NCBI GenBank assembly: GCA_002269645.1
Contig: NIVC01003471.1
Location: 32,248-96,247 of the forward strand
Origin: Macrostomum lignano
Taxonomy: Eukaryota
DNA length: 64,000 nt
Reading direction: 5' to 3'
Of this stretch, positions 2,572-53,168 are shown one piece after another (position 1 is the first letter of the stretch; each line of letters begins with the position of its first letter). The notes beneath the pieces were generated by a model. That model made no database searches. It saw nothing but the letters and a program-made list of their open reading frames with translations, and was not told where the DNA came from. Position numbers and translations under genes: made by a program.

Positions 2572-25461
<22,890 letters not shown>

Positions 25462-48129: not shown

Positions 48130-48900
48130 AGGCTTGGATAGCGACTCAGGTGACGAATCATACGTGACTGCATCTGGTGGAGGCTAAAAAGGTCCAGACT
48201 GTGAATCCGCCAGACAACATCGGAGCTAACTGGCATGATACTGCACTCCGGAAACGGATAATCGGCCCAAAGCACTTCCAGAGTTTCTCGGCTCGCTTGG
48301 TCTGCATTCGGATTTTCTTGTGCCGGACAACATTGAAAATTGCATGGCTGCCATCCTTGGTCAATTTCTTCCCGACAGTCTTCTGCAAAGTTTGTGCGCC
48401 TGGACAACCGCCAGAGCAAACAGGGCTGTTACGCAAAGTCAACAAGAAAACGGAGAGCTGCCATGGAAGCTCCTAAATTGGAAGCCTGCATGCAGCCTGA
48501 ATGAAATGCAGTTTATCGGGATTCTGCTGCACATGGGAGTAGTACAGAAGCCAGATATTAGCATGTATTGGTCAACCGATCTTATGCATCATCAGGACTT
48601 CTTCCGCCATGAGTCATCTCACCATGACCTGGTTTCGCTGCTACGATTGCACGGAGGTTAAAGAAGCTGATCCGCTGTGCAAGATCGACCCATTTTAAAC
48701 AAAGTCCAGTCCATCTGTCAAAATAAGTACATGCAACTTCAAAATATTTCTGTTGACAAGTCATTGCTACTTTACAAAGGTAGGCTCCACTTTCTTCAGT
48801 ACATGCCCAACAAAAAGGCAAAGCTCGTCACCAAGCTGTACTGTCCAGCCGAATCGAACAGCGGCTATCTGTGGAACTTTCTGATCCACTCGACTGCAGC
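48130..48900 (+). pseudogene. piggyBac-like (DDE_Tnp_1_7, PGBD4-type) transposase remnant, frameshifted and 3'-truncated
   Basis: FLPDSLL..L..WT, FIGILLHMGVVQKPDISMYWSTD, ISVDKSLLLYKGRLHFLQYMPNK.AK..KLY...ES.SGYLWNF, in different frames. No TIR found. Confidence 0.78.
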
Positions 48901-49283
48901 CCAAAACAACCTGTTGGAACTTTCTGATCCACTCCACTGCGGCTCAAAACAACCGGTTGGAACTTTCTGATCCACTCCACTGCGGCCCAAAACAACCTGT
49001 TGGAACTTTCTGATCCACTCGACTGCAGCCCAAAACAACCTGTTGGAACTTTCTGATCCACTCCACTGCGGCCCAAAACAACCTGTTGGAACTTTCTGAT
49101 CCACTCGACTGCGGCCCAAAACAACCTGTTGGAACTTTCTGATCCACTCCACTGCGGCCCAAAACAACCTGTTGGAACTTTCTGATCCACTCGACTGCGG
49201 CCCAAAACAACCTGTTGGAACTTTCTGATCCACTCGACTGCAGCCCAAAACAACCTGTTGGAACTTTCTGATCCACTCCACTG
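48873..49283 (+). repeat. 43-bp minisatellite (ggaactttctgatccactcgactgcagcccaaaacaacctgtt), ~9.5 copies, starting within the piggyBac coding sequence
   Basis: The first unit encodes WNFLIHSTAAQNNL in frame with the transposase. Confidence 0.93.
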
Positions 49284-49506: not shown

Positions 49507-49610
49507 GCCAGCAGCGATAGAAAGTAAATCGAGCACAAGCCAGTGCCCCAGAAATTCGGAACTGGGGCCAGAATTTTCTGACATGGCCGTCATGCGAATC
49601 AGCTGCTGAC
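49507..49610 (-). promoter_or_regulatory. Candidate SECIS element in the SELENOW 3' UTR (type II-like, long apical stem)
   Basis: Helix I GTCAGCAGC/GCTGCTGGC; core ATGAC..CGAT; 12 nt to an unpaired AAAA; helix II GGCCATGTCAG/CTGGCTTGTGCT; extra stem GCCCCAG/CTGGGGC. Folded by hand. Confidence 0.72.
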
Positions 49611-49704
49611 AAGGCGGAGGCCCAGACTTCAGGTGAGCACTCCTACTGAATCAGGGTTCTTACTTTACCTAACAGTACATTGCCCCTGCCTCTGAGTCCC
49701 CAGC

Positions 49705-50177
49705 TCAGCCTTTGCAGGCCGCCAGCACAGCGTCGGCAATCTTCTGGCAATCGGCGGCGGCCGGGAACCGCCCGGTCTGCAGCTTGGAGTACACCTGGCT
49801 GCCGTTGATGAACACCTCGAACTTGGACGTGGCGGTGGGCGTCGCCTCGTACGTGAAATCCGCATTGTCGCCCGAACCGCCCAGCAGGTCCAGCAGCTCC
49901 TCTTTGAAGCGCCGGAACCTGGGGGCGTAGCCTCAGGCTCCGCTGCGATTAAGGTTGAATGGGAAATTGACAGGAAACTTATTTCATAATTCTCAAAGCT
50001 CTGGGATAAGCGCGAAATTGTTCGCTTTTGATCAACTGAAAAGTCTTAAGGCTCAGGTGGAAAACTGCTCCAGTCACCGCTGGCATGAGAAATTTTATAC
50101 GTTGTTGCTCTGAATTGTGCCTTCACAAGCTCGTAAAAATTGACTCACCAGTAAACGACGTGCACCTTGACTACCAT
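49705..50177 (-). CDS. SELENOW: Selenoprotein W (Rdx family), 88 aa. Exons 50177-50149, 49942-49705; Sec codon UGA at 49935-49933
   Basis: The spliced product MVVKVHVVYCGA(U)GYAPRFRRFKEELL...ATPTATSKFEVFINGSQVYSKL matches the SelW pattern V.VVYCGAUGY....TP.ATG.FEV...G..IHSK. GT-AG intron, phase 2; SECIS downstream. Confidence 0.92.
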
Positions 50178-50354
50178 GACTGGGACTGAGCGAGCTTGGT
50201 TAGAAATGTAGCGCCGAGTGTAATTGTTGACTTATTGTGCAGTCTGGAGTATCGGGAAATGAAAATAAGTTCAATTTAATAGCAGATTTGGCTTGTGATC
50301 GCTTGAGTACCTGGCCTAACACATGGGCTGGGTAGGTGGGACTTCTTAGGAGGG

Positions 50355-50855
50355 GTCGGTCAGAACTGTGTGTACATTGGGGTGGGTGGAGGGGTCGGTT
50401 AGAGCTGTGTGTACAATGGGGTGAGTGGAGGGTCGGTTAGAGCTGTGTGTACATTGGAGTGAGTGGAGGGGTCGGTTAGAGCTGTGTGTACATTGGAGTG
50501 AGTGGAGGGGTCGGTTAGAGCTGTGTGTACATTGGGGTGGGTGGAGGGGGTCGGTTAGAGCTGTGTGTACATTGGAATGAGTGGAGGGGTCGGTCAGAGC
50601 TGCGTGTACATTGGGGTGGGTGGAGGGGGTCGGTTAGAGCTGTGTGTACATTGGAATGAGTGGAGGGGTCGGTCAGAGTTGTGTGTACATTGGGGTGGGT
50701 GGAGGGGGTCGGTTAGAGCTGTGTGTACATTGGGGTGGGTGGAGGGGGTCGGTTAGAGCTGTGTGTACAATGGGGTGGGTGGAGGGGGTCGGTTAGAGCT
50801 GTGTGTACAATGGGGTGGGTGGAGGGTCGGTTAGAGCTGTGTACATTGGGATGGG
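50355..50855 (+). repeat. 39-40-bp G-rich minisatellite (ggaggggtcggttagagctgtgtgtacattggggtgggt)
   Basis: About 12 tandem units. Confidence 0.93.
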
Positions 50856-51604
50856 TTGAGAGAGTGCAATGGGGTAGAGGGTTTCGATCAAGATGGTTGG
50901 TTGAAAAAGTTTACGCGATGCTATCCTGTTGGCATAAAGGTAACAAATCACAAAATGAGACGCAATTCTATACATCGGTAGGTGCAGGGCTGGTCTTCAA
51001 ACAATGTATTTGAGTCGCCGGTTCCTATTACATGTATGTTACCATCGCCAAAGGCTGCTGGTGATCTAACAAAAACAAAAAAACTGAAAGAAATCGCGTA
51101 AATAATCAATTAAAAAAACTGTTTGTGGACATGGCCAGGTAGGATTAGTATCGCTCTACGTTCTAAGTATACTCAGCAACATTGATAAGTCGCCACCCTT
51201 TGCCCCAGTGAGCATTGAAAAAACTTAAATGCTTGAAAAATCGATGAAAACCGGGCGGAAGCTTCAATCCATCCAATCTTCGCCCTCCGCTCTTCCCAAT
51301 CCTCCTCACGCAGCCCAACTCTGCGTCGCGTGGCGCAAGTTGCGTCGCTCAAAAGTCAATCCTGAGCTGGAATTTACTGCGCAATCTCAAAGGTGGCGAA
51401 TTTTTAATGTTGTTGAGTACAAATCTGGAAAAGCAGTCATACATAAGGTAAATAAATTTAAGCGCGTTAAGTTAGTAAAAATCGAAGGCAAATGTGAGAA
51501 GCAAACTGAATGAACAAAAGCGAAATTTTCTTTGAAGTTTGCAAAAAATGAGAAAAAAGGTTTAATTTAGGGATTGGGGAGACTGACGACGTTGAATGGG
51601 CCTG

Positions 51605-52105
51605 AGTGTACATTGGGGACTGGGGAGGGGGCTGAATTGGGCCAGAGTGTACATTGGGGACTGGGGAGGGGGCTGAATTGGGCCAGAGTTTACATTGGGG
51701 ACTGGGGAGGGGGCTGAATTGGGCCAGAGTGTACATTGGGGACTGGGGAGGGGGCTGAATTGGGCCAGAGTGTACATTGGGGACTGGGGAGGGGGCTGAA
51801 TTGGGCCAGAGTGTACATTGGGGACTGGGGAGGGGGCTGAATTGGGCCAGAGTGTACATTGGGGACTGGGGAAGGGGCTGAATTGGGCCAGAGTGTACAT
51901 TGGGGACTGGGGAGGGGGCTGAATTGGGCCAGAGTGTACATTGGGGACTGGGGAAGGGGCTGAATTGGGCCAGAGTGTACATTGGGGACTGGGGAGGGGG
52001 CTGAATTGGGCCAGAGTGTACATTGGGGACTGGGGAAGGGGCTGAATTGGGCCAGAGTGTACATTGGGGACTGGGGAAGGGGCTGAATTGGGCCAGAGTG
52101 TACAT
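51605..52105 (+). repeat. 41-bp G-rich minisatellite (gggggctgaattgggccagagtgtacattggggactgggga)
   Basis: About 12 tandem units at 41-bp spacing. Confidence 0.95.
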
Positions 52106-52564
52106 TTTGTGTGGCTACTGTGTAATTTGCGTACAAGGTAAGTGAGCTTAGCATAGTAAGTTTTTGTGCGTTTCAATTTCAATGCGTTTTGAGCAGTGAT
52201 TTTCTAGCATTTAACACAAATCTGATCAGCTCGTGCCGCTGAAGATTTTACTAGTCCGAAATCTCTGCTCAGCTCATTAATAATAAGCCGCTTGAAACAA
52301 AAAGTCAACTAAAAATCTACAGAGGAATGAAACGCACCAAAGCCCCGGGTAAGGAGAAATGCGAAATTAACGACACGAATACAGAGACGAGCGCAAGCAG
52401 AGATCCGGCCTCAGAGAACTGCATGGACGCAAAAATTAAGAACAGAAATCTTCAAAAGAATGAATTAAAAATTTTAAAGATTGCTTTGACTGCATAGTTC
52501 GTTTGCTGCTTTCTATTAAGACGATTTAAACTGAAAAGTAAAGGCGGAGTGCCGGCACAGCCCG

Positions 52565-53060
52565 AGGATCTGAGAGGCTGGCCCAGCAACTGAGGATCTG
52601 AGAGGCTGGCCCAGCAACTGAGGATCTGAGAGGCTGGCCCAGCAACTGAGGATCTGAGAGGCTGGCCCAGCAACTGAGGATCTGGGAGGCTGGCCCAGCA
52701 ACTGAGGATCTGGGAGGCTGGCCCAGCAACTGAGGATCTGGGAGGCTGGCCCAGCAACTGAGGATTTAAGGGGCTGGCCCAGCAACTGAGGATCTGGGAG
52801 GCTGGCCCAGCAACTGAGGATCTGGGAGGCTGGCCCAGCAACTGGGGATCTGGGAGGCTGGCCCAGCAACTGAGGATCTGGGAGGCTGGCCCAGCAACTG
52901 AGGATCTGGGAGGCTGGCCCAGCAACTGAGGATTCGGGAGGCTGGCCCAGCAACTGAGGATCTGGGAGGCTGGCCCAGCAACTGGGGATCTGGGAGGCTG
53001 GCCCAGCAACTGAGGATCTGGGAGACTGGCCCAGCAACTGAGGATATGGGAGGCTGGCCC
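52565..53060 (-). repeat. 28-bp GCCAGCCTCCCAGATCCTCAGTTGCT-family array on the minus strand, downstream of the BTBD9 stop
   Basis: Reverse complement of the GBF1 intron arrays. Confidence 0.93.
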
Positions 53061-53168
53061 ATTGTTAATGAATTATACCTACTTAGCGGCTGAGCCTCAG
53101 TTAGTTACCGTATAATACGAGTTATTACACGAAATACACGGAAACGGTCAAGCTAGGCCAAATAGCGC

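What the first reader, a model, noticed from the sequence alone, without database searches (positions are those of the whole stretch)
49705..50177. Hidden selenoprotein W gene with in-frame UGA, invisible to the ORF track
A 29-nt first exon splices to a second exon whose fourth codon is TGA, giving the CxxU motif (YCGA-U-GY) and an 88-aa SelW-like product. The Cys codon is split by the intron. Standard predictors would truncate or miss the gene. It implies working Sec machinery in this organism.
Basis: partly seen in the sequence, partly recalled or inferred. Interest (0 to 1): 0.72.

Follow-up and report, generated by a model that had tools for sequence, protein, structure and literature searches.

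The report
Flatworm selenoprotein W gene, ordinary
The window, from the flatworm Macrostomum lignano, does hold a two-exon selenoprotein W gene with an in-frame UGA and a matching 3' signal, but this is an expected animal gene and not a surprise.

Summary
On the minus strand, a 29-nt coding exon (50177-50149) is followed by a 206-nt GTGAGT...CAG intron. A second exon (49942-49705) completes an 88-codon reading frame. Codon 13 is TGA, inside VVYCGA-U-GY. The product matches Pfam Rdx (E 3e-14), and its best solved relative is mouse selenoprotein W. Six relatives recovered from public data all carry TGA at the aligned codon. One unrelated AT-rich genome has the same 29-nt first exon and the same intron splitting the Cys codon. 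A canonical SECIS-like stem-loop (AUGA...AAAA...GA, 49610-49507) starts 94 nt after the stop codon. It is the best of four such candidates in 128 kb, although Rfam's SECIS model does not score it. The contig is NIVC01003471.1 of Macrostomum lignano, a free-living flatworm. Flatworm SelW genes are already catalogued: six in Schmidtea and two in Schistosoma japonicum. I rate it a real, probably unannotated, ordinary member of a well-known family. Transcript evidence and the Sec machinery could not be checked with these tools.

The parts
50149..50177 (-). Coding exon 1 (29 nt): ATG plus codons 2-9 and the first two bases (TG) of the Cys10 codon. It encodes MVVKVHVVY(C), the first beta strand of the Rdx fold.
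   Evidence: The Pfam Rdx match starts at residue 4. Relatives start the same way. L002 has a first exon of the same length.
49943..50148 (-). Phase-2 intron of 206 nt, GTGAGT...pyrimidine-rich tract...CAG, 41% GC against 64% in the exons.
   Evidence: An intron sits at the same position in the L002 gene.
49705..49942 (-). Coding exon 2 (238 nt): the last base of the Cys10 codon, G11, A12, Sec13, then 75 further codons and the stop TGA at 49707-49705.
   Evidence: tblastn places residues 11-88 at 49941-49708.
49933..49935 (-). In-frame TGA, the predicted selenocysteine codon 13, in the motif C10-G-A-U13.
   Evidence: TGA occupies the aligned codon in all 6 distinct relatives whose DNA was read (L002, L003, L004, L007, L008, L009).
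49507..49610 (-). Predicted SECIS element (104 nt, form 2). Helix I is GUCAGCAGC(U)GAU / AUCGCUGCUGGC. The core is AUGA at 49593-49590 paired with GA at 49530-49529, with quartet context AUGAC/CGAU. Helix II has about 10 bp. Unpaired AAAA lies at 49577-49574, 11 nt after the quartet. The apical mini-stem is CCCCAG/CUGGGG.
   Evidence: Read by eye. The MFE fold gives -47 kcal/mol, z -2.9. My own consensus scanner ranks it best of 4 candidates in 128 kb. Only 1 candidate this stable appeared in 12 shuffled windows. Rfam SECIS_1 does not detect it.
49507..49704 (-). At least this much 3' UTR, from the stop codon through the SECIS. The true poly(A) site is unknown.
   Evidence: Inferred from the position of the SECIS. 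No transcript data were available.

Best explanation
This is a functional two-exon selenoprotein W (SELENOW/Rdx family) gene of the flatworm Macrostomum lignano. The pre-mRNA is spliced at 50149|49942, which rebuilds the Cys10 codon. The ribosome reads UGA at codon 13 as selenocysteine because a SECIS stem-loop in the 3' UTR (49610-49507) recruits SBP2, eEFSec and Sec-tRNA. The 88-residue product is a small thioredoxin-fold protein with a Cys10-x-x-Sec13 redox centre. Shown here: the gene anatomy, family membership, conservation of the TGA and of the intron position, and a SECIS-like structure in the right place. Inferred: splicing in vivo, actual Sec insertion, and the thiol/selenol oxidoreductase role. 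The exact biochemical function is still unsettled even for mammalian SelW.
For: Spliced frame of 267 nt with GC3 85% against an intron of 41% GC. Pfam Rdx E 3.2e-14, covering residues 4-77. The best solved-structure match is mouse selenoprotein W, 2npb, E 4e-9 over residues 1-85. An exhaustive HMMER search with the 75 residues after the TGA found small SelW-like proteins 41-57% identical. DNA was read for six of them (P0002, P0005, P0006, P0008, P0009, P0012), and all have TGA at the aligned codon. L002 has an identical 29-nt first coding exon, ending TG|GT, followed by AG|T GGC GCA TGA GGT TAT. The SECIS-like element starts 94 nt after the stop codon (its AUGA core 111 nt after). It has the quartet AUGAC/CGAU, the same context as the L007 relative's SECIS, AA at the canonical distance, and total energy -40.7 kcal/mol. 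It is the best of 4 candidates in 128 kb. Shuffled windows give 7.75 candidates per 128 kb, and only 1 in 12 shuffles reached -40 or below. That puts the chance of any candidate in a 300-nt 3' UTR at about 0.02, and of one this stable at about 2e-4. The source is an animal. SelW selenoproteins are documented in free-living and parasitic flatworms (PMC3828610).
Against: Rfam SECIS_1 gives no hit, even at E<=10 on a 131-nt slice. That model also scored only 1 of 6 relatives' loci, and that one below its gathering score. No M. lignano transcript or protein for this gene was found in the protein collections. No published M. lignano selenoprotein analysis was found. The window holds no tRNA-Sec or other Sec machinery, and the rest of the genome could not be searched.
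Confidence: 0.9

Rival explanations
1. A real SelW gene whose transcript differs from this model. Possibilities are an extra 5' non-coding exon, a spliced-leader acceptor, or an isoform lacking the first coding exon, as reported for Schistosoma japonicum SelW2.
For: No transcript data could be reached. A SelW isoform without the first exon is described in S. japonicum, Lottia and Trichoplax (PMC3828610).
Against: Exon 1 encodes the conserved first strand and the Cys of CxxU. It aligns to all relatives and has exactly the L002 exon length. An isoform without it would lack the resolving Cys.
Confidence: 0.07
2. A pseudogene or decaying copy in which the TGA simply terminates translation after 12 residues and the gene is not expressed as a selenoprotein.
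For: The gene lies in a repeat-rich stretch between minisatellite arrays. Expression is unverified. Rfam SECIS_1 is silent.
Against: The 75 codons after the TGA are open, strongly codon-biased (GC3 85%) and conserved. The TGA sits exactly where all relatives have it. Splice sites are intact and a SECIS-like element is in place. A dead gene would not keep all of this.
Confidence: 0.03
3. A chance resemblance: a random open frame that happens to look like SelW.
For: None beyond the small size of the gene.
Against: Pfam E 3e-14 and PDB E 4e-9. About 50% identity to six independent SelW sequences. Shared intron position.
Confidence: 0.001

Closest known systems
Mammalian selenoprotein W (SELENOW/SEPW1; mouse structure PDB 2npb)
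   Same: Same length class (88 against 87-88 aa). Same N-terminal VVYCGAUGY motif, with Sec at position 13 and Cys at position 10. Same Rdx thioredoxin-like domain. 38% identity over 82 aligned positions. UGA is recoded through a 3' UTR SECIS.
   Different: The central loop and C-terminal helix have diverged. There are two extra cysteines (C75, C86) near the C-terminus. This gene has only one coding intron. From memory, not checked here, the mammalian gene has more.
Flatworm SelW genes (Schmidtea mediterranea SelW1a-c and SelW2a-c; Schistosoma japonicum SelW1 and SelW2), PMC3828610
   Same: Same phylum, same family, Sec-containing, with a short first coding exon and a family-wide first splice site.
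   Different: Macrostomum was not part of that survey. I could not obtain those sequences to assign this gene to the SelW1 or SelW2 subfamily.
SelW-like gene on Logan contig SRR24319163_69265 (locus L002, organism unknown, 26% GC)
   Same: A 29-nt first coding exon ending in TG, an intron splitting the Cys codon, then GA-TGA-GY. 51% protein identity, including the shared KxQTGRFP motif.
   Different: L002 has a second intron that the Macrostomum gene lacks. Its base composition is very different, and its SECIS is cut off by the contig end.
Other Rdx-family proteins: bacterial SelW-like proteins (2p0g, 2fa8), MIEN1/C17orf37 (2ljk), SelT, SelH, SelV
   Same: Same fold family, with a CxxC/CxxU motif after strand 1.
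   Different: The matches are much weaker (E 3e-5 to 0.9 against 4e-9 for SelW). These proteins have different lengths and extensions. MIEN1 and most bacterial members use Cys, not Sec.

Membership tests
Selenoprotein W (Rdx family, Pfam PF10262) | Sequence match to the Rdx thioredoxin-like domain across essentially the whole small protein | tested here: met
   53.3 bits against a cut-off of 22.6, E 3.2e-14, residues 4-77 on profile positions 1-70 of 74. Mouse SelW 2npb E 4e-9 over residues 1-85.
Selenoprotein W (Rdx family, Pfam PF10262) | CxxU redox motif directly after the first beta strand (VVYCGAUGY in SelW) | tested here: met
   C10-G-A-U13 followed by GY. The same motif, with TGA in the DNA, occurs in L002, L003, L004, L007, L008 and L009.
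Selenoprotein W (Rdx family, Pfam PF10262) | Size of about 85-90 residues with no extra domains | tested here: met
   88 residues. Relatives are 86-89 residues once read to their true stops.
Selenoprotein W (Rdx family, Pfam PF10262) | Animal gene structure: a short first coding exon ending within the Cys codon, just before the Sec codon | tested here: met
   An identical 29-nt exon and phase-2 intron in L002. A common first splice site is drawn for the SelW family in PMC3828610 Fig. 5 (legend only; the figure was not seen).
Eukaryotic selenoprotein gene (any family) | SECIS element in the 3' UTR: helix I, internal loop, AUGA/GA non-Watson-Crick quartet, helix II, and unpaired AA 10-13 nt after the quartet | tested here: met
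   49610-49507(-) meets every consensus feature in my own scanner. It is the best of 4 candidates in 128 kb. Shuffles give about 0.02 expected candidates per 300 nt.
Eukaryotic selenoprotein gene (any family) | Match to the curated covariance model Rfam SECIS_1 (RF00031) | tested here: not met
   No hit at E<=10 in 1.6 kb or in 131 nt. As a control, the model scored only 1 of 6 relatives' loci, at 26.7 bits, below its gathering score of 35. The test is therefore insensitive for this group.
Eukaryotic selenoprotein gene (any family) | Sec machinery in the same genome (tRNA-Sec, SBP2, eEFSec, PSTK, SepSecS, SPS2) | not testable with these tools
   There is no tRNA in the window, and the rest of the M. 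lignano assembly is not searchable here. The machinery is expected from established knowledge: SPS2, TR, GPx, SelT and Sel15 selenoproteins occur in all flatworms examined (PMC3828610).
Eukaryotic selenoprotein gene (any family) | Expression, splicing and Sec insertion in vivo | not testable with these tools
   No M. lignano transcript-derived protein was found. Held supplements of two M. lignano papers do not list it.

The most novel reading that the evidence does not exclude
The most novel reading still open has two parts. First, the gene may be a Macrostomum-specific SelW variant whose two extra C-terminal cysteines (C75, C86) form an additional redox or regulatory site. Second, its SECIS, with a long apical mini-stem, a 9-nt AA-containing bulge and no Rfam match, may be a divergent flatworm SECIS form that standard models miss.
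Probability: 0.1. Interest if true: 0.25.

Novelty: new member of a known kind. Interest (0 to 1): 0.12.

Why it matters
The main value is for annotation. ORF-based and standard gene predictors truncate or skip selenoprotein genes. This SelW gene appears to be absent from the protein collections searched, and no M. lignano selenoprotein study was found. Recording it helps complete the selenoproteome of a regeneration model flatworm. It also adds a data point for an old, conserved intron that splits the Cys codon of the CxxU motif. It does not change what is known about selenocysteine biology.

Tried and rejected
- **Word-indexed protein search.** The full spliced product, with Sec written as C and then as W, gave no hits. 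The M. lignano protein is therefore not in that collection.
- **Rfam scan for SECIS.** It was run on 1.6 kb and on 131 nt and gave nothing relevant. A control on relatives showed the model is insensitive for this group.
- **First SECIS scanner.** My first version had a constraint bug and was discarded.
- **Covariance model from relatives' SECIS elements.** I considered this and dropped it. Only three training elements were unambiguous, and their apical parts differ too much to align reliably.
- **Fetching transcript contigs through small ORFs overlapping exon 2.** I tried the wrong-frame 66-aa ORF, the antisense 72-aa ORF and the 36-aa true-frame fragment. None is on record.
- **Supplement searches of two M. 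lignano papers.** I searched for SEPW1/SELENOW and Sec-machinery gene names and found nothing. The only 'selenoprotein V' labels belong to proline-rich low-complexity transcripts, not SelW.
- **My initial guess.** I first thought of a green alga such as Chlamydomonas or Volvox, from the TGTAA motif and the high GC3. I dropped this once the contig was identified as M. lignano.
- **Pfam scan of large ORFs elsewhere in the window.** It gave only low-complexity or repeat artefacts.

Full report
**Observation**

On the minus strand an ATG lies at 50177. A 29-nt exon (50177-50149) ends in TG and is followed by GTGAGT. The 206-nt intron ends in AATCGCAG at 49943. Exon 2 (49942-49705) begins with C, which completes a TGC Cys codon, and then reads GGA GCC TGA GGC TAC.

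The spliced frame is 267 nt, that is 88 codons plus the stop. It reads MVVKVHVVYCGA-U-GYAPRF...AACKG. The exons have 64% GC and 85% GC3. The intron has 41% GC.

The mechanical ORF list shows only a 36-aa GTG-started tail of this frame.

**What it is**

With Sec written as Cys, the product matches Pfam Rdx (PF10262) at 53.3 bits (cut-off 22.6, E 3.2e-14). The match covers residues 4-77, so it starts inside exon 1. The best solved structure by sequence is mouse selenoprotein W (2npb, E 4e-9, residues 1-85). Weaker matches follow to bacterial SelW-like proteins and to MIEN1.

The word-indexed protein search found nothing. An exhaustive HMMER search with the 75 residues after the TGA did find small SelW-like proteins 41-57% identical.

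In the database those relatives show W at the Sec position, and some run on past their stop codon. Reading the DNA of six of them shows why. Each has TGA at the aligned codon, and the gene caller read TGA as Trp. Across the full length the relatives are 47-51% identical to the window's protein, and mouse SelW is 38% identical.

**Support for the splice model**

One relative, L002, is genomic DNA from an unrelated genome with 26% GC. Its gene begins ATGGCAGTTAAAATACACGTTGTTTATTG|GTAAAT...ATAG|TGGCGCATGAGGTTAT. That is again a 29-nt first coding exon, a phase-2 intron inside the Cys codon, and TGA three codons later.

A shared intron position in two genomes of very different composition is strong evidence that the window's junction is real. 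It also suggests the intron is old. The flatworm selenoproteome paper likewise marks a common first splice site for the SelW family (PMC3828610; I read the figure legend only).

**SECIS**

A eukaryotic UGA is read as Sec only if the 3' UTR carries a SECIS element. By eye, and then with a scanner I wrote, the segment 49610-49507(-) meets the consensus in every respect:

- The scanner required AUGA, a helix II of at least 8 bp, unpaired AA 9-13 nt into the 5' strand, a GA on the 3' strand, and a helix I of at least 5 bp.
- Helix I is GUCAGCAGC(U)GAU / AUCGCUGCUGGC.
- The quartet context is AUGAC/CGAU.
- Helix II has 10 bp.
- AAAA lies 11 nt after the quartet.
- The apical mini-stem is CCCCAG/CUGGGG.

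The scanner also recovered plausible SECIS elements in four of five relatives' 3' UTRs. One of these, in L007, is independently supported by a sub-threshold Rfam hit and has the same AUGAC/CGAU context.

In the whole window, 128 kb counting both strands, the scanner reports four candidates. The one behind SelW is the most stable, at -40.7 kcal/mol against -31.4 for the next. Twelve dinucleotide shuffles of the window gave a mean of 7.75 candidates, and only one candidate as stable as -40 appeared across all twelve. The chance of any candidate falling in a 300-nt 3' UTR on the right strand is thus about 0.02. For one this stable the chance is about 2e-4.

Against this, Rfam SECIS_1 gives no hit, even on a 131-nt slice. 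The same model scored only one of six relatives' loci, and that hit was below its gathering score. I therefore weigh this negative lightly.

**Source**

An intact 1300-aa gag-pol ORF elsewhere in the window (3042-6944, minus strand) is on record on NCBI contig NIVC01003471.1 of assembly GCA_002269645.1. Several papers identify that assembly as Mlig_3_7 of the flatworm Macrostomum lignano. Window position equals record position minus 32247, and the window runs to the end of the contig.

**Comparison with what is known**

[quoted passage not shown] A dedicated survey found six SelW genes in the free-living planarian Schmidtea mediterranea and two in Schistosoma japonicum. It also found SPS2, TR, GPx, SelT and Sel15 selenoproteins in every flatworm examined (PMC3828610).

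A SelW gene, and the Sec machinery it implies, is thus expected in a free-living flatworm. I found no paper on Macrostomum selenoproteins. The gene's product is not in the protein collections searched. It is therefore probably unannotated: a new member of a known kind.

**Limits**

I could not obtain any M. lignano transcript, nor any mention in the held supplements of two M. lignano papers. I also could not search the rest of the genome for tRNA-Sec or the protein factors, and the window itself has no tRNA. Splicing in vivo, Sec insertion and the presence of the machinery therefore remain inferences. They rest on conservation and on established knowledge of animal selenoproteomes.

**Rivals**

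- A pseudogene reading is unlikely. The 75 codons after the TGA are open, biased and conserved, the splice sites are intact, and the SECIS is in place.
- A variant transcript structure remains possible but would not change the identity of the gene. Examples are an extra 5' exon, trans-splicing, or an isoform without exon 1 like the one reported in S. japonicum.
- Chance is excluded by the E-values and by the shared intron.

**Verdict**

The finding is real and correctly interpreted, but ordinary. Confidence in the main explanation is 0.9 and interest is 0.12.

Noticed in passing
window 3042-6944 (-), and + strand from about 2551 onward: An intact 1300-aa gag-pol ORF of a gypsy-type LTR retrotransposon (RVT_1, RNase H, integrase domains) lies inside, and antisense to, a large Sec7-domain gene (2023-aa product) called on the + strand. 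I deliberately did not delimit or assemble the element.
   Followed up: partly
window 48872-49283, 50349-50860, 51593-52106, 52564-53061: Four minisatellite arrays: 43 nt x 9.6, 40 nt x 13, 41 nt x 12.6 and 28 nt x 17.8 copies. The SelW gene sits in a unique island of about 1.07 kb between the first two. The upstream arrays are G-rich on the + strand (from the consensus units), in line with the +0.41 GC skew of 50-52 kb. They also create long spurious ORFs.
   Followed up: partly
loci L003-L009 (proteins P0002, P0005, P0006, P0008, P0012): The SelW relatives in the public protein collection are mistranslated. Sec appears as W, and two of them run 70+ residues past their true TGA stop, because the gene caller read TGA as Trp. 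Word-indexed searches with C or W at that position still missed them.
   Followed up: yes
L003:694-1113: This intronless SelW gene has no ATGA in the first 400 nt after its stop codon, and another gene on the opposite strand starts about 130 nt downstream. Its SECIS may be non-canonical.
   Followed up: no
L002:2740-3331: The SelW gene in this 26%-GC genome has an extra intron after codon 36. A SECIS-like start (ATGACAGAG...AAAA) sits at the very end of the contig, so the element is cut off. The organism behind SRR24319163 was not identified.
   Followed up: partly
window 49705-49785 (-), residues 75 and 86: The Macrostomum protein has two cysteines (C75, C86) in the C-terminal helix that none of the seven aligned relatives has.
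   Followed up: no
window 14605-14705 (+), 15557 (-), 44067 (-): These are the three other SECIS-like candidates from my scanner. The one at 14605 (+) lies within the span of the + strand Sec7-domain gene, and the one at 15557 is made of a tandem repeat. I treat all three as false positives.
   Followed up: partly
L007:631-676 (-): A histone 3' stem-loop-like match (Rfam RF00032, 26.7 bits, below the gathering score of 34, E 4e-4) lies on the strand opposite the SelW mRNA-like contig.
   Followed up: no
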